IMG/VR virus record: IMGVR_UViG_3300027985_000843
Span: 248,001-312,000 of that record
Reading direction: 5' to 3' (one strand)
Length of the DNA: 64,000 bases
In this document: in pieces, positions 2,161 through 20,268 of the stretch
Layout of the letters: every line of letters begins with the position of its first letter
Position numbering within the stretch: the first letter of the stretch is position 1
Program-made: the position numbers and the translations under genes
Notes under the pieces: generated by a model
Databases searched by the model: none
Seen by the model: the letters and a program-made list of their open reading frames with translations, nothing else
Told to the model about the DNA's origin: nothing

Positions 2161-2265
2161 ATTTATCCCATTGTGCCCCAACCATCATTGGGAACACGAC
2201 CATCCATGAGGGGCGCCTCCCGCCTCGGGACATCGTGAATGCACTTGTGGTTCATATCACTTGAA

Positions 2266-3270
2266 ATGCAACGAATTCTGCTAGTAGAAGACAGCCCGTC
2301 GGACAGAGAAATCTTGAAGTACCTGCTCGAAGAGCAGTTCAAGAAGGAGGTCGTTCTACACGAAGCTCCGTCACTGTCCAAGGCAGTAGAGATTCTCGAC
2401 AAAGAGGGTATCGATTGTGTCGTGCTTGACCTTCAGCTGCCGGACTCCGCAGGTAAAGAGACGTTCCAAAAGCTGTACGCCAGGTACTCACACATCCCGT
2501 TCATCGTGATGACCAACAATAAGGACCGCTTGCTGGCCGTCGAGATGATCCAGCTCGGAGCCGCAGACTTCGTCCTGAAGAATTACACCGACGAGGAAGA
2601 CATCTTCCGACGCATCGTGTTCGCGATCGAAAAGCACAAGAGGAGCGTTCGGGTGGACCCTACTGAAGCGGACAGCTTCCGGCGCGTGTCGAGCGCCAAT
2701 TTCAGGTTGGTGCAAGCTCAGGAGGACGACGCTAGCCCCAGCACCATTCGGAACATCCAAGTCGAGACGACAGCAGCTGTTGCGGATCTGTCCCGCAAAA
2801 CGTTCGCGGCTCTCCAGGAGATCAACATCAGCTTCGCGAAGAACAACATGCAGTGGAGCGAGGTCGCGAAGACAGTTGCCATCCTCGACAAGGAGCTTCT
2901 CAGGGGGCATTCCAACAGGCCCAGCATGCGGTCGCAGATGGACCTGATGGACCATCGCATTCAGGTTCTCGAAGGCGAGGTCAACGGCTTGCAAGAAGAC
3001 GTCACCGAGACGAACATCACAGCCATCAAAGAGAACAACCAGACGGCTCGCACCAAACTGTCCATGTGGACCAAGCTGCTGATCGCGCTCCTGACCCTGC
3101 TCGGTGTTCTCGCCACCGCCGCCGCCACCTACTTCGCCGCCGCTGCCAACGCCAGCAAGAAGGAATACGAGTCCCTGAAGGACTACGACGCCTTGAGGGC
3201 GGCATCCACCGCTGCGGCACCGAAGAAAGCCCCGGCAACCCTAGACCCAAATCCAAAGAGTAGCAAATGA
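2266..3270 (+). CDS. response-regulator receiver fused to coiled coil and C-terminal TM segment
   Basis: ILLVEDS, VVLDLQLPDS (phospho-Asp), GAADFVLK; hydrophobic LLIALLTLLGVLATAAATYF. Confidence 0.85.
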   Translation: MQRILLVEDSPSDREILKYLLEEQFKKEVVLHEAPSLSKAVEILDKEGIDCVVLDLQLPDSAGKETFQKLYARYSHIPFIVMTNNKDRLLAVEMIQLGAADFVLKNYTDEEDIFRRIVFAIEKHKRSVRVDPTEADSFRRVSSANFRLVQAQEDDASPSTIRNIQVETTAAVADLSRKTFAALQEINISFAKNNMQWSEVAKTVAILDKELLRGHSNRPSMRSQMDLMDHRIQVLEGEVNGLQEDVTETNITAIKENNQTARTKLSMWTKLLIALLTLLGVLATAAATYFAAAANASKKEYESLKDYDALRAASTAAAPKKAPATLDPNPKSSK

Positions 3271-4418
3271 CTGACACCACGAGGCCCGTTCCGGAACCCC
3301 TCCCGGAATGCGACTACGACTATCAGTGCCCGCGAAGAGAGATTCTCAGCCGGCTGTACGGGATCATGAAGGCCATCCCCGATTCTGTGTTCGAGATCGA
3401 CAGAGAGGGGCGGCATCTGTTCGTGCATGCCAACGGGGATACCCCTACGGACCCAAGACGGATCAAGGGGATGACCCTTCAGGAGCTGCTACCCGAAGAC
3501 ATTGTCGAGCCCACCATGCAGGCCATTCAACAAGTCCTGGAGACGGGGCAAAACATGACCCTGGACTACTCCATCCCACCCGCCGAAGGCAGCGGCGGTC
3601 CGGTGAGGCACCTCCAGGCGCACCTAGGCCGAACGCCCAACATGACCGTCGTGGCGATCGTCCGAAATGTGTCTGACCTGGTCGAACACCAGAAGAAGCT
3701 CCTCGAAGCAAACCAAGCCCTCACCCAATTCACATCCCTCGTCTCCCACGACCTGCGAGAACCCCTCACCGGGATTGCAGGCTTCGCTACCCTGTTGCAA
3801 AACCGCTACGAGGGCGATCTCGACGAACGAGGCCAACACTTCCTGGACCGGATCGTGGAGGTGTCGAAGCAAATGGAGAAAAAGCTGGACGACCTTCTCG
3901 CTTTTTCAAAGGCCGGAAAGGAGACGCCCTTCGAGCCCTTCCCCTTCGGAGCCGCCGTAGAGGAGGCAAAACGAGCCCTAGTACGAAAAATCGCTACCAC
4001 TGGAACGCGCATCGAGATCGTCGGAGAGTTGCCAATCGTGCACGGGGATCGAAGTCTTATCGCTCAAGTCTTGCAGAATCTGTTTTCGAACTCGATCAAG
4101 TACAGACGGAAAGACGAGACGCCCCACATTACGATCGAGGTAACCTCTCACGACCTTCCCTTCTGGAAAGTTGCCGTGAAGGACAATGGTATCGGCTTCG
4201 ATATGCGACACCGGGACAAGATTTTTGGAGTTTTCCAGCGCCTGTACACGGTCGAGCAGTACCCTGGAACAGGAATCGGCCTCGCTATCGCACGCCGTAT
4301 CATCGAGCGCCATGGGGGAGACATCTGGCCTTGGTCCGAACCAGGAGCCGGAGCCACATTCTACTTCACTCTACCCAAACCGACGGTCGACGATCATGGT
4401 GGATATCCTGCTGGTTGA
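3267..4418 (+). CDS. PAS-domain sensor histidine kinase (HisKA + HATPase)
   Basis: SHDLREPL H-box, QNLFSNSIKY N-box, DNGIGF G1, GTGIGL G2. Confidence 0.95.
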   Translation: MTDTTRPVPEPLPECDYDYQCPRREILSRLYGIMKAIPDSVFEIDREGRHLFVHANGDTPTDPRRIKGMTLQELLPEDIVEPTMQAIQQVLETGQNMTLDYSIPPAEGSGGPVRHLQAHLGRTPNMTVVAIVRNVSDLVEHQKKLLEANQALTQFTSLVSHDLREPLTGIAGFATLLQNRYEGDLDERGQHFLDRIVEVSKQMEKKLDDLLAFSKAGKETPFEPFPFGAAVEEAKRALVRKIATTGTRIEIVGELPIVHGDRSLIAQVLQNLFSNSIKYRRKDETPHITIEVTSHDLPFWKVAVKDNGIGFDMRHRDKIFGVFQRLYTVEQYPGTGIGLAIARRIIERHGGDIWPWSEPGAGATFYFTLPKPTVDDHGGYPAG

Positions 4419-13102: not shown

Positions 13103-14269
<1,167 letters not shown>

Positions 14270-14357
14270 GTTCCTTACCTTGGGTTGCCAGCCCTATGTC
14301 GTCTCATGTCTCCTTACTGTTGACCCCGCCGGACCATCCGACTCCAGGGGCGTAACA

Positions 14358-14435
14358 TGGCGGTCCTGACGAGATTTGAACTCGCGGTCTTCATCGTGAC
14401 AGGATGACGGGGACTCCAGGCTCCCCTACAGGACC
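14358..14435 (-). tRNA. tRNA-Asp(GTC)
   Basis: cloverleaf, loop CTGTCAC, G73, CCA. Confidence 0.95.
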
Positions 14436-14454
14436 AAATTCCCGTGGCTTCCGA

Positions 14455-14541
14455 CCAGCATTGCGGGGCTCGAACCCGCCCACCCGGTTTGGAATGACAG
14501 CTTACGCTTGCCGGTGCTCTCCCAACTGAGCTATCCGCTGG
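14455..14541 (-). ncRNA. tRNA-like RNA with ~16-nt insertion in the anticodon loop and mismatched acceptor
   Basis: canonical D arm GCTCAGTTGGGAGAGC and T arm GCGGG-TTCGAGC-CCCGC; CCGG/CCGG stem encloses CAAGCGTAAGCTGTCATTCCAAA. Confidence 0.7.
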
Positions 14542-14675
14542 CCCTCCCCCACGGGCGTCACCACTTCCGCACGAACTTCCTCAGCACAGCCTGTCCGGGC
14601 CTTCCCCCGGCTCACGTTTTTAAAGCGTAGAGCTGTCGTTACCGTGCTGGATCCGTCCGAGCCTCCATGGCTACT

Positions 14676-14750
14676 TGGCACTCCCAAGGGGACTCGAACC
14701 CCTGTTATCCGATAGAGAGTCGGATGTCCTGGCCGCTAGACGATGGGAGC
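14676..14750 (-). tRNA. tRNA-Glu(CTC)
   Basis: cloverleaf, loop CTCTCTA, CCA. Confidence 0.9.
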
Positions 14751-14751
14751 A

Positions 14752-14828
14752 TGGTCGGCGAGGCGGGACTTGAACCCGCGATTTCCGGCTTGTCGAGCCG
14801 GCGTCTTAGCCATCTGGACCACTCGCCG
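14752..14828 (-). tRNA. tRNA-Val(GAC)
   Basis: cloverleaf, loop TCGACAA, CCA. Confidence 0.9.
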
Positions 14829-14853
14829 TTTTTTCTTGTGAGATAGGATAGGC

Positions 14854-15180
14854 ATGAAGAAGATCGCCTCCCCCATGGAACTACAGGCTGAGCTGGTCAG
14901 CCTTCAAGAGTACATCTACAGCTTCACAGGCAAGCCCGACCGAGAGGTTCTTGCCTCGAAACTGCGGGACCTTGCTGAACGGGTGGCCTCCGACAAGACC
15001 GAATCCAAGTTCAAGAAGGGTCAGAAGGTGACCTACAAGGGCAAGCCCGCGACCATCGTCGAGGTGGCCGGCAACGGCAAGGTCACGATCAAGGCCCAAG
15101 GTGGGGCTGCCGTCAAGACGTTCTCCCCGGACGAAGCCGAGAAGTCTCTCAAGACCGCCTCCTCCCCCGACTACTACTGA
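14854..15180 (+). CDS. hypothetical protein, possible SH3/KOW-like domain
   Basis: MKKIASP...ERVAS...FKKGQKVTYKGKPATIVEV. Confidence 0.7.
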   Translation: MKKIASPMELQAELVSLQEYIYSFTGKPDREVLASKLRDLAERVASDKTESKFKKGQKVTYKGKPATIVEVAGNGKVTIKAQGGAAVKTFSPDEAEKSLKTASSPDYY

Positions 15181-15181
15181 G

Positions 15182-15254
15182 CGTCCCCGGCTGGATTCGA
15201 ACCAGCGACCGCCTGTTTAGGAAACAGGTGCACTATCCGCTGTGCTACAGGGAC
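15182..15254 (-). tRNA. tRNA-Arg(CCT)
   Basis: cloverleaf, loop TTCCTAA. Confidence 0.95.
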
Positions 15255-15442
15255 ACGCCCTTCTTTTTCCGGAAGGGTGGGAGGCCCGCAAACAGGCGGC
15301 AAAGAATCTCACCCCTGCTGCCCTCAGGAAACTGATCGGCCGCCCGAGCACAGCCAGCTTGCATAGCCCGACGAAGTTGTTCTCGCCCCTGAGGCGTCCT
15401 CAGGTACGAAGCCGTGTCGCGGTCGTTCTCTTGCTTATCCAT
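15245..15442 (-). CDS. hypothetical protein
   Basis: 65 aa ORF filling the spacer between two tRNAs. Confidence 0.45.
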   Translation of the reverse strand: MDKQENDRDTASYLRTPQGREQLRRAMQAGCARAADQFPEGSRGEILCRLFAGLPPFRKKKGVSL

Positions 15443-15444
15443 AG

Positions 15445-15529
15445 CGGAAGACGGGAGAGTCGAACTCCATACCTTGCGGTACGCATTGATTAGCAGTCAA
15501 GCTTGGTTCCACAACCAATTCTGTCCTCC
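15445..15529 (-). tRNA. tRNA-Ser(GCT), atypical D arm
   Basis: GGAGGAC/GTCTTCC, G73, loop CTGCTAA, long variable arm. Confidence 0.85.
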
Positions 15530-15534
15530 AGTAG

Positions 15535-15621
15535 CGGAAGGAGGGAGAGTCGAACTCCCAAGGCCATTTCAGGCTCAACCGGGTTCGAGCCGGTCCCCAT
15601 CGCCCATTGGGTTGCCCTTCC
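15535..15621 (-). tRNA. tRNA-Ser(CGA)
   Basis: G73, loop CTCGAAC, long variable arm. Confidence 0.9.
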
Positions 15622-15713
15622 TTGGCACACGGACGGAGGCGACCCGTTTCGGTCATCTGCTTTCGGACGCCATTCCCGAACGCAGGTGACCTGGGAACCG
15701 TGTGTCCCCAGGG

Positions 15714-15794
15714 CGGAGGGAGTAGGATTCGAACCCGACCTTTCGGCAACCAGTGTTCAAAGCTGGCGTGGCGACCAACACCACCTCACCCTCC
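15714..15794 (-). tRNA. tRNA-Ser(TGA)
   Basis: G73, loop TTTGAAC, variable arm with GAAA loop. Confidence 0.85.
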
Positions 15795-15798
15795 TAGT

Positions 15799-15820
15799 GC
15801 CGGTCTATCCCGGCCGTCAC
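15799..15820 (-). ncRNA. GTGACRGC-hairpin motif copy 1 (3' end of a ~185-nt structured spacer)
   Basis: GTGACG-GCCGG-GATAGA-CCGGC, 4 nt before tRNA-Ser(TGA). Confidence 0.6.
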
Positions 15821-15988
15821 GGGCACCGCATACCCAGATTGAATTCTCTCCAGACATGGGTGTGTTGGGTGTGGGCTCGCTCCCGTCCTGAGCACCTGGT
15901 CTCTTCCCAACTGAGGGCTTCGGCATTTTGGGCTTTCCTAGGCCAGCATCGATTTTACGTCTGTCGACACCCCACGATGCAAACACGA

Positions 15989-16078
15989 TGGCGGAGAAAG
16001 GCGGAATCGAACCGCTGCCGCTTTCGCGACCTCCCGCGTTCCAGACGGGCCTGGCTCCCAACGCCAGCTCTGTTCTCC
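15989..16078 (-). tRNA. tRNA-Ser(GGA)
   Basis: G73, loop CTGGAAC, long variable arm, CCA. Confidence 0.9.
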
Positions 16079-16280
16079 AAGGTCGGGGGTGTCGAGTGAT
16101 CAAATCGAACCCCCTAGGACTCGCCCGGGTAAACCAGTCCCGGAGTGAGGAATCGAGGAGACGTCCGCGTAGGCCGAACGCCGCATGACCCCACCGTTTT
16201 TGAGCTTTCACTCGGGTGTTTAGCGATCTCAACAGGTGCTTACCTACAGCAAAGAACACCTGTCTCGAATGAGTCCCTAG

Positions 16281-16352
16281 TCGGGGTGACTGGAATTGAA
16301 CCAGCCGACGCTCGGTCCCGAACCGAGTGGCCCACCATGAGCCTTCACCCCG
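16281..16352 (-). tRNA. tRNA-Pro(CGG)
   Basis: C1-G72, loop TTCGGGA. Confidence 0.9.
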
Positions 16353-16528
16353 AGACGCCCGGTGATAGAGGGCAGGCGTATTCACCGGACTCACCTGACT
16401 CGGACAGAGGGTGTCACCAGGGCTGCCATGGAGGGTCTCGACTCCCCTCCGTACACCTTGACCTTGTCTACCAGTGCTCTCCACCAAAGTTGCCGAGGCG
16501 AATCACTCCTCAACAGGTCTCTGGTTTC

Positions 16529-16602
16529 GGTTGCGGGAGTAGGAATCGAACCTACGAAGCCGAGCGTATGAAACTTGGTTGGGAGCCAACACCCTTCCCA
16601 CA
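16529..16602 (-). tRNA. tRNA-Met(CAT)-like, atypical
   Basis: TGTGGGA/TCCCGCA acceptor, loop TTCATAC, weak anticodon stem. Confidence 0.65.
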
Positions 16603-16682
16603 CATCTGCTGCCCCTAGGAGGGGCCGTAAAGCGACTTTCATCGTCCTCAGGTCCTAGGTGACCTGAGCCTTGCGAAGACTC

Positions 16683-16758
16683 GGTAACGGGAGCTGGATT
16701 TGAACCAGCGACCTTCGGGTTATGGGCCCGACGAGCTTCCAGACTGCTCCATCCCGCT
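16683..16758 (-). tRNA. initiator tRNA-fMet(CAT)
   Basis: three G-C pairs TCGGG/CCCGA in anticodon stem, loop CCCATAA. Confidence 0.9.
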
Positions 16759-16782
16759 ATGGGTCCTGCCTAAGCAGAACCT

Positions 16783-16945
16783 GAGAGCCAGTGTGCTGTC
16801 ACGCCAAAGACTCAGGTAAATCCGGTGCTTATGGCTGCCCGTCTTCCAACGGGTCCGCTTCCGGTCAGGACGTGAGGTCGCTTTCGCTCACCCCCGAGTC
16901 ACTCTTTATAGGATGGCTGCCTCTAAGCCTACCTCCTGGACTCTC
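16783..16945 (-). ncRNA. stand-alone mimic of the 23S rRNA GTPase-associated centre (H43-H44) with ~95-nt insertion
   Basis: rc CCAGGAGGTAGGCTTAGAGGCAGCCATCCTATAAAGAGTG-[insert]-CGTGACAGCACACTGG, closed by non-rRNA GAGAG/CTCTC helix. Confidence 0.85.
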
Positions 16946-16946
16946 T

Positions 16947-17022
16947 TGGTCGGGATGGTCGGACTCGAACCGACGATCTCCTGTCCCCCAGACAGGCGCC
17001 CTTGCCGCTAGGCTACACCCCG
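16947..17022 (-). tRNA. tRNA-Pro(GGG)
   Basis: cloverleaf, loop CTGGGGG, CCA. Confidence 0.95.
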
Positions 17023-17246
17023 TGGACCACGATGACCTTCCGACCTTCACCGGTCTTGCCTCCAGCCGGGAGAGCTAACGCCGTCGTGGCGGCGACCCAT
17101 CCGGGTCGGGATCTATCTTGATCCAGGGGGTTTGCCCTGAGGGGAAGGCCCCTGGAACGTGCGGCAACCAACCGCTTCTTCGTGAGGAGATCACGCCTCA
17201 CTAGCCACTGGTCAGGTGGCACGTTGTATTCGCCCCGAAGGGAGAA

Positions 17247-17389
17247 GGTCGGCCGTCCCGGAGTCGAACCGGATGCTTGTAAGGGTCGAAGGAGCTGCTT
17301 CCCTTGCGAGAAGCGAGGTACGACACTGGAAAGAGCTTTTGGCTCCAGCTCCTAAATGCTGGCGGGGGACCCTCCCCCTATGACGGCCA
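17247..17389 (-). ncRNA. tRNA-like RNA A with ~70-nt variable-arm domain (8-nt loop ATTTAGGA)
   Basis: acceptor, D hairpin, CCAGC/GCTGG arm, insert ending CTTACAAGC, T loop TTCGACT. Confidence 0.85.
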
Positions 17390-17444
17390 AGGGGCTTCGA
17401 CGTGTGATCCCACTCAACCCTGAAGTCAAATGCACGCCGAAGCT

Positions 17445-17555
17445 TGGTGGACCGCCCTGGAATTGAACCAGGTGTGCTTGTGAGAACCGCCGAGCAGCAT
17501 TGCCGAAGCAACGCGAGGTGGTGGTGCTGGTAAGTGGAATCCTATCCAGCGGCCC
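17445..17555 (-). ncRNA. tRNA-like RNA B: acceptor + T arm + family domain, no anticodon arm, encoded ACCA
   Basis: GGGCCGC/GCGGTCC-ACCA, UUCG-capped helix, CTCACAAGC, T loop TTCAATT. Confidence 0.8.
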
Positions 17556-17558
17556 ATT

Positions 17559-17580
17559 GCCCGTCTTTCCGGGCTGTCAC
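17559..17580 (-). ncRNA. GTGACRGC-hairpin motif copy 2
   Basis: GTGACA-GCCCG-GAAAGA-CGGGC, 3 nt before RNA B. Confidence 0.6.
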
Positions 17581-17674
17581 CTCAATCCCTCTGAATCTGC
17601 CAGGACTTCGAGGGTCGTCGAGGTTACGAGTTGGTGGTCCCCGTTACCACGCCATACCCACGTGCGAGAACCAG

Positions 17675-17814
17675 CGGGCCGCCCTGGATTCGAACCAGGT
17701 GTTGCTTGTAAGAGTCGTGAGGCAGCTCCCCTTTCAAGGAGCGAGGTACGACGCTGGAAAGAGCGTTGTGCTCCAGCTTAAGAGGCTGGTGGTCTGCCAT
17801 TGACCGTGCGGCCC
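17675..17814 (-). ncRNA. tRNA-like RNA C (anticodon CTT, Lys) with ~70-nt variable-arm domain
   Basis: GGGCCGC/GCGGCCC, D arm GGTC-AATGGCA-GACC, CCAGC-CTCTTAA-GCTGG, insert, CCTGG-TTCGAAT-CCAGG. Confidence 0.9.
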
Positions 17815-17922
17815 AAACGCCCCATTCTCTCGGCTCAGTCCCATGGCACCGTTTGTGGTCCGATGGCTACCTCGCCAAGACAGCGTGAGGCACGCTGTAG
17901 GAGTCGCGATCTCCTAAATTTT

Positions 17923-18085
17923 GAAGCACTCGATGGATACGCCTGGGTAGCTTTGATGCTTGCGCCTAATGCAAGTGCCTGTACCAGTTCGGCTACTCCG
18001 CCATTGAGCGGGCCTCGCGGCCCTGGTGGCGGAGGTGGGATTCGAACCCACATATGCGTGTAAGACGAGTCGAGCTGAGTGCTTC
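17923..18085 (-). ncRNA. circularly permuted family member P1 (Leu-TAG-like)
   Basis: order: GAAGCACTC...CTTACACGC, T arm, CTCCGCC-ACCA, 21-nt linker, GGCGGAG, D arm, CTTGC-ATTAGGC-GCAAG, ...GAGTGCTTC. Confidence 0.85.
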
Positions 18086-18228
18086 GGAGGGCCATCCTGG
18101 AGTTGAACCAGAGAGCTTGTAAGGGCTGCGTGGCAGCTCCCCGTGAAGGGAGCGAGGTGCAACACTGGGTGAGCGTTGTATGCTCCTCCGTGGAAGGGAG
18201 GTGAGGAACCGATCCTCTGTGATGGCCC
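18086..18228 (-). ncRNA. tRNA-like RNA D (anticodon TCC, Gly) with variable-arm domain
   Basis: GGGCCAT/ATGGCCC, CCTCC-CTTCCAC-GGAGG, insert ending CTTACAAGC, T loop TTCAACT. Confidence 0.85.
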
Positions 18229-18231
18229 GAA

Positions 18232-18253
18232 GCTCGTCTCTCCGAGCTGTCAC
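18232..18253 (-). ncRNA. GTGACRGC-hairpin motif copy 3
   Basis: GTGACA-GCTCG-GAGAGA-CGAGC, 3 nt before RNA D. Confidence 0.6.
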
Positions 18254-18396
18254 CCCGTCACGAAACTCGACCAAAGGTACACGCAGGTTTCCAATCTGCA
18301 TTGTCCTGGTGCCCCAGGACTGAACCAGAAGCAGAGTTAACTCGACACCGAGGTTGTGAGAAAGTGGAGGCGTTCGAGGCGAAGTGCTGGATTTTG

Positions 18397-18469
18397 ATGC
18401 TAGAGACAGGAATCGAACCTGTAACCAACGGCTTGATAGGCCGTAGCTCTACCTATGAGCTACTTTAGC
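18397..18469 (-). tRNA. tRNA with ATC anticodon (nominally Asp, A34) on a non-Asp body
   Basis: GCTAAAG/CTCTAGC, A73, ACGGC-CTATCAA-GCCGT, canonical D and T arms. Confidence 0.8.
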
Positions 18470-18499
18470 GTGTGAGCACGTCTGGGCTGAACGCCTTAG

Positions 18500-18640
18500 A
18501 GGGGAAGTCTGGAGTCGAACCAGATTTGGCTTGTAAGGGCTGCTTGGCTGTCTCCCTTTCGAGAGACGATGCGCAACACTGGAAGAGCTGTTTAGCTCCC
18601 GCTTTCCTGGCGGGTGGGGCACCGTGCCCCTAACTTCCCC
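18500..18640 (-). ncRNA. tRNA-like RNA E (loop CAGGAAA, A33) with variable-arm domain
   Basis: GGGGAAG/CTTCCCC, CCCGC/GCGGG arm, GAAA-capped helix, CTTACAAGC, T loop TTCGACT. Confidence 0.85.
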
Positions 18641-18748
18641 CGTGAGTCTTCGCTTTTCAGAGAACCTGGGGTTGTCACCAACCCGCACTCACTCTCTACA
18701 CCGGTCGAGCGAAGACGCTGTCAAAAATCGACCGGCGAGAGAAAAAAG

Positions 18749-19327
18749 TCAGAGGCGGCTCGCCCCGTTCTTGTGGGCGTAGAAGCCTACCTGTCGACCA
18801 TCCTCGATGAACTGCTGTACCGAGAAGGCCATGTAGCTCGATACGAGGGCAATGAACGGTAGGAACTCGCCACCCTCACAGGTAGCAGCCCCAGCCACGT
18901 CCTCGTCATCGATCTCGAAGTTGGCGTCCCACACGACCTGGCCGAACGTACCGTCGGGCGCGAGGGCACCATGCAGGCAGGGGGTGCCCGCCTTGCGGAC
19001 GAACTTCTGAACGGTTCGGCGAGCCTCCCCATTGTCCAAGCAGTCGAGCACAAGGTCAGCTCCACCAAGAAGCGCCTCGACGTTGTCTGAGACCATCTTG
19101 TGGGGATTCGTCTTGATCTTGAGCCCGAACAGGAACTGGAGACTCTGTGCGAGACCTAGGACCTTGTTCTTGCCCACCGACGGTTTGCCGTGGAACTGGG
19201 ACTTGACGTTCTTCTGCTCCACCCGGTCGAAGTCGATCAGGGTGAAGTCGGCGTCAAAGTTGCGAGCGAACTGCATGAAGTGGGATCCAAGGGCCCCGAC
19301 TCCTACCACAACGATCTTCATCTTCAT
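18749..19327 (-). CDS. ThiF/MoeB-family E1-like adenylating enzyme
   Basis: VGVGALGS, DFDRVEQKN, LDCLDN, candidate catalytic Cys in ATCEG. Confidence 0.9.
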   Translation of the reverse strand: MKMKIVVVGVGALGSHFMQFARNFDADFTLIDFDRVEQKNVKSQFHGKPSVGKNKVLGLAQSLQFLFGLKIKTNPHKMVSDNVEALLGGADLVLDCLDNGEARRTVQKFVRKAGTPCLHGALAPDGTFGQVVWDANFEIDDEDVAGAATCEGGEFLPFIALVSSYMAFSVQQFIEDGRQVGFYAHKNGASRL

Positions 19328-20268
19328 CCTTCCAAGTCCTTGTAAGACCTGCGACTGATAATTCTACCCATAGCAGAATCAGTGATTCCAAACTTTCGGG
19401 CCAGAGAGGCTTTTGTCCAACCTTCAGCAAAAAGACCACGTGCTTCCAATACTTGGTCGTCGGACAGCTTCCTGGATGGCTTCCAATTTGGCTCCCGAAC
19501 AAACCTTAACTTGTATAAACAACAAGCCGGGAGATGGTTCTCTACCAGGGACTTGAGCTTCACGGCCTCAGCTTTTGTGTTCACAGCTATCTTGAACTGT
19601 CCTGGTCGAACAGAGCTTTCCCGAACTACAGTACGTACACCCAGCGAGCCTAGCTTCTCGGAGAGTCGAGAGACACAACCCTCAGAAAAACCATCTGTGC
19701 AGAAAAATAACTGACCTTGTCGATCATAGGTACCGTCGCCTGCAAACCACTGAGCAACAGACAAGGGTGTCAAGACAAGGTCAGAGGGAACTATCTTCAC
19801 ACCCCTGGGGTACCACCTAGCCCGCTGAGTTTTGAACTCACTGTAACAAGGTGTATACAGCAAACGACCGCCCCGCCCATGAATGACACGATCACCCAAG
19901 CACTTGGACCGAGGTGGGACGGGAATGATGGCGGATTCACAACCGTGTTCTACAAGCAGCACAGTCAAAGAGTCCAACCAACCCAACCGAACACGGCCCT
20001 GCTCCAATCGAAGACTCCCCTTAGGGTCCAAGGAGCCATCCCCCAAAAGGACGCCTTCTAAGACCTGCGACACAAGGTCCCAGTCGGCTCGGTGCTCTCG
20101 ATCACCTAGATACCTTGCATTCTGTTCCTTAGAGGAACGTACGAGAACACCCGTCTTCTTCAAACGATTGAGAACATTCCATGTAGAGCAACCAAGTCGG
20201 CGAGCGATAGAGGACGCGCTCTCGCCCGACAGATAGGCTTCGGTCAAAGCTTGGTGATCCATGATCAA
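19324..20268 (-). CDS. free-standing LAGLIDADG homing endonuclease with terminal HTHs
   Basis: LEGVLLGDGSL and AQWFAGDG motifs; inserted between Ubl and E1. Confidence 0.85.
   Translation of the reverse strand: MIMDHQALTEAYLSGESASSIARRLGCSTWNVLNRLKKTGVLVRSSKEQNARYLGDREHRADWDLVSQVLEGVLLGDGSLDPKGSLRLEQGRVRLGWLDSLTVLLVEHGCESAIIPVPPRSKCLGDRVIHGRGGRLLYTPCYSEFKTQRARWYPRGVKIVPSDLVLTPLSVAQWFAGDGTYDRQGQLFFCTDGFSEGCVSRLSEKLGSLGVRTVVRESSVRPGQFKIAVNTKAEAVKLKSLVENHLPACCLYKLRFVREPNWKPSRKLSDDQVLEARGLFAEGWTKASLARKFGITDSAMGRIISRRSYKDLEG

What the first reader, a model, noticed from the sequence alone, without database searches (positions are those of the whole stretch)
15799..18253. Third RNA motif: GTGAC(A/G)-5bp-GANAGA-5bp hairpin repeated three times, always 3-4 nt before a tRNA 5' end
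SEEN: GTGACG-GCCGG-GATAGA-CCGGC (15799-820), GTGACA-GCCCG-GAAAGA-CGGGC (17559-580), GTGACA-GCTCG-GAGAGA-CGAGC (18232-253). The stems covary fully. Each ends a 110-185-nt non-coding, hairpin-rich spacer and abuts the next tRNA or tRNA-like gene. The GAC mimic also contains GTGACAGC. INFERENCE: either the 3' module of another ncRNA family released by RNase P cleavage of the downstream tRNA, or a processing/protein-binding signal.
Basis: partly seen in the sequence, partly recalled or inferred. Interest (0 to 1): 0.65.

Follow-up and report, generated by a model that had tools for sequence, protein, structure and literature searches.

The report
Widespread phage RNA hairpin preceding tRNAs
The three small hairpins in front of tRNA genes in this giant phage are real, and they belong to a strongly conserved RNA hairpin motif that I could not find in Rfam or the literature, that occurs in phages and prophages of nearly every bacterial phylum, and that sits a few bases ahead of tRNAs or gene starts, with its function still to be tested.

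Summary
GTGACR, a 5-bp stem, a GANAGA loop and the return strand occur three times, all on the minus strand. About 0.13 copies are expected by chance. Each copy ends 3-4 nt before a tRNA or tRNA-like gene. A covariance model finds only these three copies in the window.

The motif is not private to this phage. In 202 of 246 matches the two free stem pairs are Watson-Crick. It also occurs in cultured phages (mEp390, CS01, DIBBI, MD18, Pokken, Medea1). Rfam 15 has nothing on it, and I found no paper describing it.

Consensus: a variable hairpin P1 (A-C-NNN...NNN-G-U), then G-R-C-R, then P2 with a GARAGA loop, then A and a G-poor tail.

Among the 202 instances, 85 nearby tRNAs are all on the same strand. 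Twenty of them start 4-12 nt after P2 and none at 13-82 nt. Other copies lie ahead of ribosome-binding sites or in long untranslated operon leaders. Homology between unrelated phages breaks exactly at the motif's edges.

Best reading (about 0.35): an RNA-level boundary element that defines or protects RNA ends. Antitermination, factor binding and self-cleavage are not excluded.

The parts
15799..15820 (-). Motif copy 1, core: GUGAC-G, P2 stem GCCGG (15814-15810), loop GAUAGA (15809-15804), stem CCGGC (15803-15799). It is followed by ACUA (15798-15795).
   Evidence: (25.7 bits).
15819..15886 (-). Candidate P1 of copy 1: ACGGG (15886-15882) paired with CCCGU (15823-15819), with a loop of about 58 nt. 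It fits the family consensus but is not in the minimum-energy fold.
   Evidence: Sequence read; consensus; one search does not predict it.
15712..15794 (-). tRNA-Ser(UGA), whose 5' end lies 4 nt after copy 1.
   Evidence: ARAGORN; Rfam sub-threshold hit.
17559..17580 (-). Motif copy 2, core: GUGAC-A, GCCCG, GAAAGA, CGGGC. It is followed by AAU.
   Evidence: (30.3 bits).
17579..17624 (-). P1 of copy 2: ACCUCGA (17624-17618) paired with UUGAGGU (17585-17579), enclosing an inner hairpin. The last G-U of this helix is the start of GUGAC.
   Evidence: Minimum-energy and centroid fold, z = -3.4.
17444..17555 (-). tRNA-like gene with a 7-bp acceptor stem, a T arm, a long central domain and an encoded ACCA. 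It starts 3 nt after copy 2.
   Evidence: z = -2.9; not called by ARAGORN or Rfam.
18232..18253 (-). Motif copy 3, core: GUGAC-A, GCUCG, GAGAGA, CGAGC (6 bp if A18248-U18231 is counted). It is followed by UUC.
   Evidence: (32.5 bits).
18088..18228 (-). tRNA-like gene with a ~70-nt structured variable arm (the family I call TL-V) and anticodon-loop sequence CUUCCAC. It starts 3 nt after copy 3.
   Evidence: Consensus fold of four paralogues, 16 of 34 pairs compensatory.

Best explanation
The three hairpins are copies of a widespread phage RNA motif that I could not find described anywhere.

Anatomy: a variable helix P1 (5'-A-C-NNN ... NNN-G-U-3', loop from 8 to more than 100 nt), the linker G-A/G-C-R, a 5-bp helix P2 closed by G-C and capped by the hexaloop G-A-R-A-G-A, then an A and a short G-poor tail.

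Proposed function: it acts on the RNA as a boundary ('punctuation') element inside long, mostly untranslated phage transcripts. It marks the 3' edge of one RNA unit directly ahead of the 5' end of the next unit (a tRNA, a tRNA-like RNA or a ribosome-binding site).

Proposed mechanism in this window: RNase P cuts at the 5' end of the downstream tRNA or tRNA-like gene. This leaves P1-P2 with a 3-4-nt tail at the 3' end of the upstream spacer RNA. A compact GC-rich hairpin with so short a single-stranded tail should resist 3'-exonucleases, so the upstream RNA would survive as a discrete species.

The invariant loop and linker imply that the hairpin is also read by a conserved partner, or has an activity of its own. 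That partner or activity is unknown.

Shown: the motif, its covariation, its spread, its orientation and its spacing. Inferred: the cleavage, the protection and any partner.
For: - Real and non-random in the window: 3 copies against 0.13 expected, with compensatory stems. The covariance model scores them at 25.7-32.5 bits and finds nothing else.
- A structure under selection: both free stem pairs are Watson-Crick in 104 of 120 IMG/VR matches and 98 of 126 genome matches, against 1 in 16 expected by chance. On 111 distinct sequences P2 is 99.6% paired, with 36 and 66 double changes at the two free pairs, and 0 of 500 shuffles reach the observed values.
- P1 pairing: 45 of 96 observed against 20 +/- 3.5 in permutations.
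- RNA-level action: 85 same-strand tRNAs lie within 500 nt of 202 instances and none on the opposite strand. All cultured-phage copies run in the direction of the flanking operon.
- Boundary position: 20 tRNAs start 4-12 nt after P2 and none at 13-82 nt. In L158 four tRNAs (one called by ARAGORN, three read by eye from the sequence) each have a copy 5-7 nt upstream, and a fifth copy precedes a ribosome-binding site. In Phaeobacter phage MD18 the motif fills the whole spacer between two tRNA-Leu genes. In 18 of 104 IMG/VR copies a Shine-Dalgarno sequence plus start codon follows within 15-66 nt.
- One group of copies lies upstream of the head-tail adaptor gene; the upstream gene was not identified.
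- Edges of homology: among unrelated contigs, 40 pairs share only the upstream flank and 24 only the downstream flank. The breaks fall 0-7 nt after P2 or 0-4 nt (mostly 0-1) before GUGAC. mEp390 and Xanthomonas phage DIBBI are 94% identical over 83 nt that end within 1-2 nt of the 3' end of P2.
- The tail after P2 is G-poor.
Against: - No transcript ends are known for any copy.
- A plain protective hairpin would not need an invariant hexaloop and linker conserved across hosts from Cyanobacteria to Clostridia and Actinobacteria. Protection alone is therefore not the whole story.
- Most copies are not next to an annotated tRNA or start codon. In mEp390, CS01, Medea1 and Pokken the next annotated gene is 170-430 nt away.
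- Where no tRNA follows, nothing known would create the 3' end.
- P1 is weak for window copies 1 and 3.
Confidence: 0.35

Rival explanations
1. A cis-acting leader RNA that modifies RNA polymerase (processive antitermination or anti-pausing, in the manner of HK022 put or nut/boxB). It would keep transcription going through long untranslated stretches such as tRNA and ncRNA arrays and operon leaders.
For: - In lambdoid phages mEp390 and Stx2a_WGPS2 the motif lies in a 700-780-nt non-coding leader just after the CI-like repressor gene, where the PL operon should start. No N-like arginine-rich protein is encoded there.
- In CS01 and DIBBI it lies in the non-coding region ahead of the terminase operon. 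In Pag-Yong1 it lies at the start of an operon.
- It has a two-hairpin architecture.
- Extreme conservation across phyla would fit a universal partner such as RNA polymerase.
- P2 resembles boxB: a 5-bp GC-rich stem with a purine loop starting GA (from knowledge of lambda nut sites).
Against: - No similarity to HK022 put, and no boxA-like element was seen.
- The sharp 4-12-nt spacing to tRNA 5' ends has no rationale for an antiterminator.
- Several copies occur within a few hundred nt: three in the window, five in L158.
- It also occurs in cyanophages, whose hosts lack Rho (own knowledge), so an anti-Rho role cannot be general.
Confidence: 0.17
2. A binding site for a conserved protein or ribonucleoprotein (for example the RNase P holoenzyme, another RNase, or a ribosomal or translation factor). 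It would tune 5' maturation of the downstream tRNA or initiation at the downstream ribosome-binding site, or it would act as a decoy for that factor.
For: - The loop GARAGA, the closing G-C pair and the linker G-R-C-R are invariant, while the stem sequence is free. That is the signature of a hairpin recognised by shape plus a few bases.
- The fixed distance to the tRNA +1 position places the hairpin next to the leader-binding region of RNase P (own knowledge of RnpA-leader contacts).
- The host phage invests heavily in translation mimicry: it carries EF-Tu, about 50 tRNAs and an L11-site rRNA mimic.
Against: - No partner is identified.
- No phage protein is shared by the very different carriers (lambdoid, T1-like, N4-like, jumbo phages).
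- Many copies are far from any tRNA or start codon.
Confidence: 0.18
3. A small self-cleaving ribozyme, or the conserved core of one, that cuts the transcript next to P2 and so separates RNA units without a host enzyme.
For: - The distribution resembles that of hammerhead, twister and pistol ribozymes (own knowledge): sporadic, multi-copy, in phage and prophage intergenic regions of all phyla, and always in the sense orientation.
- About 20 conserved nucleotides are concentrated at a helix junction and in a loop, with a variable peripheral helix.
- Independence from host factors would explain identical sequence in phages of unrelated hosts.
Against: - No resemblance to any known ribozyme core, and no Rfam ribozyme family matches even at E <= 1.
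- The conserved core is very small (about 23 nt plus P1).
- No candidate tertiary contact or pseudoknot was found.
- No activity data exist.
Confidence: 0.07
4. A DNA-level element: a short conserved linker at which phage modules recombine, or the end of a small mobile element. In this reading the hairpin has no RNA function.
For: - Homology between unrelated contigs breaks exactly at the motif's edges on either side.
- The distribution is sporadic, and close relatives of the window phage lack the canonical form near ThiF.
- An 83-nt block is 94% identical between an E. coli, a Xanthomonas and a Pantoea phage.
Against: - Strict co-orientation with transcription, 85 to 0.
- The stems covary freely (at least 13 different stem sequences), which a double-stranded recombination site or protein half-site would not allow.
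- No associated transposase or recombinase was seen.
- Break points at a conserved functional motif are expected anyway, because it offers microhomology.
Confidence: 0.08

Closest known systems
Lambda-type nut sites (boxB hairpin)
   Same: A 5-bp GC-rich stem capped by a purine-rich loop that starts with GA. Located in early operon leaders of lambdoid phages (mEp390, Stx2a_WGPS2). Acts in the sense orientation.
   Different: The loop is a hexaloop (GARAGA), not a GNRA-like pentaloop. No boxA was seen. No N protein is encoded by the carriers examined. It is found far outside lambdoid phages and directly ahead of tRNAs.
HK022 put RNA (PMC9378689)
   Same: A two-hairpin cis-acting RNA in the leaders of lambdoid phages that lack N.
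   Different: No sequence similarity. put is about 70 nt with two long irregular stems and a triplex. put has no fixed relation to tRNA 5' ends.
RNase P-generated 3' ends ahead of tRNA-like structures (MALAT1-mascRNA); 3' stabilising hairpins left by RNase III in T7 early mRNAs
   Same: A stable structure lies immediately upstream of a tRNA or tRNA-like element or of the next gene. Cleavage there would leave it as the protective 3' terminus of the upstream RNA.
   Different: Those structures are lineage-specific and have no invariant loop. Here cleavage and protection are only inferred.
Start-associated sequences (SAS/ESAS) of Cluster K mycobacteriophages (PMC3203893)
   Same: Short conserved asymmetric sequences repeated many times per genome, immediately upstream of gene starts, with unknown function.
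   Different: SAS is confined to one phage cluster, contains the Shine-Dalgarno sequence, and is not associated with tRNAs. No stem covariation has been described for it.
Theta (minimal HDV-like) ribozymes next to phage tRNAs (PMC10879173)
   Same: A small structured RNA abutting phage tRNA genes, often tRNA-Met and tRNA-Leu, and proposed to help tRNA maturation.
   Different: Theta ribozymes are minimal HDV-like ribozymes whose cleavage site lies within 5 nt of the tRNA (PMC10879173). From my own knowledge, they sit on the 3' side of the tRNA and fold as a nested double pseudoknot. This motif lies on the 5' side and is two simple hairpins.
Solitary CRISPR-repeat-like RNAs (Racr, PMC10651486)
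   Same: Isolated hairpin units with conserved flanks scattered in phage non-coding regions.
   Different: Racrs copy the repeat sequence of one host CRISPR system. Here the stem sequence is free and only the loop and linker are fixed, across hosts of all phyla.

Membership tests
Any Rfam 15 family | Match to a curated covariance model | tested here: not met
   Only tRNA hits at the gathering threshold in the window and in 20 motif-bearing loci. No hit on the motif at E <= 5 in window 14000-19500, nor at E <= 1 in 12 loci.
Intrinsic (Rho-independent) terminator | GC-rich hairpin followed directly by a U-tract | tested here: not met
   The tail after P2 is A, then C/A-rich and G-poor, with no T run. 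The terminator scan of 14800-19400 does not pick up any of the three copies.
Sigma-70 promoter (GTGACA read as a -35 element) | A -10 hexamer 16-18 bp after the -35 element; start site outside the gene | tested here: not met
   No promoter-like site in 14800-19400. The six bases 17 nt after GTGACA are not TATAAT-like. The start site would fall inside the tRNA. Stem covariation is not explained by a promoter.
Lambda nut (boxA plus boxB with N protein) | boxB pentaloop with a GNRA-like fold | tested here: not met
   The loop is 6 nt (GARAGA) in all pattern-selected copies, and 7 nt (GAAGAGA) in mEp390 copy 1 and Stx2a_WGPS2.
Lambda nut (boxA plus boxB with N protein) | An N-type arginine-rich antiterminator encoded downstream | tested here: not met
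   The first proteins after the leaders of mEp390 and Stx2a_WGPS2 have no arginine-rich N terminus. Most carriers are not lambdoid.
HK022 put RNA | Sequence and structure similarity to putL or putR | tested here: not met
   blastn of the mEp390 and Stx leaders against the HK022 immunity region gives only chance matches of 10-25 nt. The only pattern hit in HK022 lies inside the cI coding sequence.
HDV-like theta ribozyme | Placement of the ribozyme and its cleavage site relative to the tRNA | tested here: not met
   The motif lies 4-12 nt before the tRNA 5' end and at least 38 nt after any upstream tRNA. No HDV-family hits in Rfam. The paper states only that the cleavage site is within 5 nt of the tRNA; that theta ribozymes sit 3' of the tRNA and fold as a double pseudoknot is my own recollection.
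CRISPR repeat / Racr | Sequence identity to a host CRISPR repeat; the same repeat sequence in every copy | tested here: inconclusive
   The stem sequence differs between copies in one genome (three stems in the window) and takes at least 13 forms overall, which argues against mimicry of one repeat. No host CRISPR arrays were available for comparison.
tRNA or tRNA fragment | Cloverleaf or a T arm with the T-loop consensus | tested here: not met
   ARAGORN and the Rfam tRNA model do not cover the motif. The loop has no U54-U55-C56. The only likeness is a G-C pair closing a 5-bp stem.

The most novel reading that the evidence does not exclude
The motif is a new class of autonomous functional RNA carried by phages of essentially all bacterial phyla. 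It would be either a very small self-cleaving ribozyme that punctuates polycistronic tRNA, ncRNA and mRNA transcripts, or a universal ligand for a core host machine (RNA polymerase, RNase P or the ribosome) that phages use to control processing or elongation of their untranslated transcripts.
Probability: 0.2. Interest if true: 0.9.

Novelty: new variant of a known kind. Interest (0 to 1): 0.68.

Why it matters
Phage tRNA arrays and long non-coding leaders are common, but how their transcripts are cut, protected and kept elongating is largely unknown.

A 22-nt core that stays nearly identical in phages of Proteobacteria, Cyanobacteria, Actinobacteria, Firmicutes, Bacteroidota, Planctomycetes, Chloroflexota and candidate phyla, while its stem covaries freely, must be read by something equally universal or must act by itself. 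It is also locked to a position 4-12 nt ahead of tRNA 5' ends.

Identifying that partner or activity would add a new family to the catalogue of phage RNAs. It would give an annotation mark for RNA-unit boundaries in phage genomes. It may also explain how module boundaries in mosaic phage genomes are set.

The motif occurs in cultured phages of E. coli, Cronobacter, Xanthomonas, Pseudomonas and Phaeobacter, so it can be tested directly.

Tried and rejected
- Rfam at gathering and at permissive thresholds: nothing on the motif.
- blastn of the whole ncRNA region against GenBank phages: only tRNA matches.
- A first IMG/VR scan with the tRNA-like signature CTTACAAGC-N2-8-GGTTC was too unspecific and was wasted.
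- Relatives of the window phage found through the neighbouring ThiF gene (18 huge phages): no canonical copy within 10 kb of ThiF, and no excess of GTGAC ahead of their tRNAs (16 of 368). A relaxed hairpin scan found only one weak copy, in L134.
- Promoter reading (GTGACA as a -35 element, ECF-like GAAC...CGT, SP6-like GTGACA-N5-GAAGAG): rejected because of variable spacing, no -10 element, stem covariation, and carriers without a phage RNA polymerase.
- HK022 put: no similarity.
- An N-like protein downstream in the lambdoid carriers: none.
- Ro60/Y-RNA idea: the nearby 624-aa VWA protein has no TROVE or Ro60 match in Pfam or in PDB sequences.
- rRNA mimicry: the covariance model finds nothing in an E. 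coli rrn operon. The string GGAAAGACC equals 23S 2056-2064, but most copies have GAGAGA, so I treat this as chance.
- E. coli genomes: the mEp390 block occurs in 1 of 5,426 genomes, so no K-12 transcriptome data apply.
- Literature searches by concept and by sequence string found no description.
- A mononucleotide shuffle test for P1 was uninformative (50 observed against 38 expected). It was replaced by a permutation test.


Full report
**Setting.** The window is part of IMG/VR contig IMGVR_UViG_3300027985_000843, a 371.7-kb huge phage. ARAGORN finds 45 tRNA genes, all on the minus strand. An EF-Tu gene sits among them (13103-14269). The stretch 15150-18700 is a dense array of tRNAs and tRNA-like genes. 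It follows an intrinsic terminator at the end of a ThiF-family gene.

**The observation.** The pattern GTGACR-N5-GANAGA occurs exactly three times, all on the minus strand, against 0.13 expected. Each copy has a perfectly complementary 5-bp stem, and two stem positions change with compensation. RNAfold predicts the hairpin in each context.
- Copy 1 (15799-15820) ends 4 nt before tRNA-Ser(UGA).
- Copy 2 (17559-17580) ends 3 nt before a tRNA-like gene with a 7-bp acceptor stem, a T arm and ACCA.
- Copy 3 (18232-18253) ends 3 nt before a member of a four-gene family of tRNA-like RNAs with a ~70-nt structured variable arm.

The three upstream spacers share nothing else in sequence.

**The motif is not private to this phage.** Eighteen related huge phages, found through the ThiF neighbour, also carry large tRNA arrays. 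They do not have the motif within 10 kb of ThiF, apart from one weak variant in L134.

In 104 of 120 matches the two unconstrained stem pairs are both Watson-Crick, where chance gives 1 in 16. The same scan of one genome per GTDB species also hit the limit (120 loci). The organisms include Acidobacteriota, Alpha-, Beta-, Gamma-, Delta- and Zetaproteobacteria, Cyanobacteria, Actinobacteria, Clostridia, Bacteroidota, Planctomycetota, Chloroflexota, Gemmatimonadota, Spirochaetota, Myxococcota and a candidate-phylum genome. Here 98 of 126 matches are fully paired.

BLAST finds the motif in cultured phages: lambdoid mEp390, T1-like Cronobacter CS01 and ESP2949-1, Pseudomonas Medea1, N4-like Stenotrophomonas Pokken, Phaeobacter MD18, Planktothrix Pag-Yong1 and others. 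Xanthomonas DIBBI, Pantoea PSKM and an Stx2a prophage turned up through the mEp390 leader.

Rfam 15 has no family for it at gathering or permissive thresholds. Searches of the paper library by concept and by sequence string found no description.

**Anatomy.** In about half of the sequences, the three bases before GUGAC plus its GU pair with an upstream A-C-NNN. This happens in 45 of 96 cases, against 20 +/- 3.5 when the 3' strands are permuted among sequences; with Watson-Crick pairs only it is 32 against 7.5. The loop of this helix P1 ranges from 8 to more than 100 nt.

A covariance model (R1) recovered 117 copies in 100 viral loci. These include second and further copies that do not fit the search pattern. 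In those copies the linker varies as U-G-A/G-C-R and the first stem pairs can change. The loop GARAGA and its closing G-C pair persist.

On this alignment P2 is 99.6% paired, with 36 and 66 double substitutions at the two free pairs. No shuffle reaches the observed scores. After P2 comes A (77%), then C/A, C/U and a G-poor stretch.

In the window, P1 is clear for copy 2 (ACCUCGA/UUGAGGU, in the minimum-energy fold, z = -3.4). It is only a possibility for copies 1 and 3.

**Position and orientation.** Around 202 well-formed instances, ARAGORN finds 45 same-strand tRNAs starting within 500 nt downstream and 40 ending within 500 nt upstream. It finds none on the opposite strand. Twenty tRNAs start 4-12 nt after P2 and none at 13-82 nt. 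No upstream tRNA ends closer than 38 nt.
- In contig L158, five copies lie within 1.5 kb. Four sit 5-7 nt before tRNAs (ARAGORN calls one of these; I read the other three from the sequence) and one sits before a ribosome-binding site.
- In Phaeobacter phage MD18 the motif is the entire spacer between two tRNA-Leu genes.
- In DIBBI it lies between two unannotated tRNAs ahead of the terminase operon.
- Eighteen of 104 IMG/VR copies are followed within 15-66 nt by a Shine-Dalgarno sequence and start codon. The downstream genes are of varied function. In one group the motif sits just upstream of the head-tail adaptor gene.
- In mEp390 and an Stx2a prophage, copies with a 6- or 7-nt loop lie in a 700-780-nt non-coding leader after the CI-like repressor gene. 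No N-like protein is encoded there.

**Module edges.** Comparing 600-nt segments around 173 copies gave 40 pairs of contigs that share only the upstream flank and 24 that share only the downstream flank. Homology ends 0-7 nt after P2, or starts 0-4 nt (mostly 0-1) before GUGAC. mEp390, DIBBI and PSKM share 83 nt at 94% identity, ending at P2. The 22-nt core is therefore a self-contained unit at the junction of otherwise unrelated modules.

**Interpretation.**
- Strict co-orientation with transcription and free stem covariation place the function on the RNA.
- The tight spacing to tRNA 5' ends, the position ahead of ribosome-binding sites and the module-edge behaviour point to a boundary element.
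- RNase P cleavage at the next tRNA (established biochemistry, not tested here) would leave P1-P2 at the 3' end of the upstream RNA. The tail would be too short for 3'-exonucleases to engage.
- I rate this at about 0.35. A mere protective hairpin does not explain an invariant loop and linker kept in phages of all phyla, and many copies have no tRNA after them.
- Those two facts keep three other readings alive: a leader RNA acting on RNA polymerase (favoured by the N-less lambdoid leaders and the operon-leader positions); a site for a universal factor such as RNase P; and a small self-cleaving ribozyme (favoured by the distribution and host independence).
- A purely DNA-level role is unlikely, given the 85-to-0 orientation bias and at least 13 different stem sequences.

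**Comparison with known systems.**
- It resembles boxB in shape and put in context, but it fails the tests for both: loop length, no boxA, no N protein, no similarity to put.
- It is not a terminator or a promoter.
- It is not a theta ribozyme: it lies on the 5' side of the tRNA and is two plain hairpins, whereas, from my own recollection of that work, theta ribozymes sit on the 3' side as a double pseudoknot.
- It is not a copy of one CRISPR repeat.
- The closest analogues in logic are structures that become 3' termini through cleavage of a downstream tRNA-like element, and the unexplained start-associated sequences of Cluster K mycobacteriophages.

**Verdict.** This is a real, statistically solid finding. 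It is a new RNA motif of a known general kind (a cis-acting hairpin signal in phage transcripts), and its function remains to be shown by end mapping and cleavage assays in one of the cultured carriers.

Noticed in passing
window 17923-18085 (-): A circularly permuted tRNA-like gene. The 3' half (variable-arm 3' strand, T arm, CUCCGCC-ACCA; 18085-18024) comes first, then a 21-nt linker, then the 5' half (GGCGGAG acceptor strand, D arm, anticodon arm with loop AUUAGGC, variable-arm 5' strand; 18002-17923). The two halves co-fold into a cloverleaf held together by a 9-bp variable-arm helix.
   Followed up: partly
window 17252-17393, 17675-17814, 18088-18228, 18503-18640 (-); possibly also 953-1042: A family of tRNA-like genes with acceptor, D, anticodon and T arms plus a ~70-nt two-tier variable arm carrying the conserved strings CUUACAAGC and CCAGUGU. 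Sixteen of 34 pairs show compensatory change. One member scores 43 bits on the Rfam tRNA model. The CTTACAAGC signature also occurs just after ThiF in several related huge phages.
   Followed up: partly
window 16896-16934 (-): A sub-threshold match to the archaeal LSU rRNA model, positions 1184-1229 (19.4 bits). This is the L11 / GTPase-associated-centre region, so the phage may carry an rRNA-fragment mimic between two tRNAs.
   Followed up: no
window 13103-14269 (-): A full-length EF-Tu homologue (GTP_EFTU plus domains 2 and 3) encoded inside the phage tRNA array.
   Followed up: no
window 18398-18469 (-): A tRNA with anticodon AUC (called tRNA-Asp by ARAGORN) that scores 67 bits on the Rfam tRNA model. 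An A34 anticodon for Asp is unusual.
   Followed up: no
window 2239-4418 (+): A response regulator and a PAS/HisKA/HATPase histidine kinase encoded side by side in the phage, on the opposite strand to the flanking tRNAs.
   Followed up: no
window 19324-20268 (-) and 18749-19327 (-): A LAGLIDADG homing-endonuclease-like gene lies directly upstream of the ThiF-family gene that borders the ncRNA array. The ThiF gene is conserved next to tRNA arrays in at least 18 huge phages.
   Followed up: no
L389 (E. coli rrlH), 23S positions 2048-2062: The string GGCAAGACGGAAAGA of the peptidyl-transferase central loop (A2058-A2062) fits the motif pattern GRCR-N5-GARAGA with no mismatch, and GGAAAGACC equals P2's loop plus flanks. 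Most motif copies have GAGAGA and the rRNA segment is not a hairpin, so this is probably chance.
   Followed up: partly
L259 2090-2780 (mEp390) and L388 1567-2346 (Stx2a_WGPS2): These lambdoid phages have a 700-780-nt leader after the repressor gene, with no N gene. Parts of the leader are conserved in many Salmonella, Klebsiella, Enterobacter and Stx phages. The 80-codon ORF annotated there in mEp390 is probably spurious.
   Followed up: partly
L261 1640-2370 (Xanthomonas phage DIBBI): Several tRNA or tRNA-like genes lie unannotated in the 1.5-kb 'non-coding' region between the primase and terminase genes.
   Followed up: no
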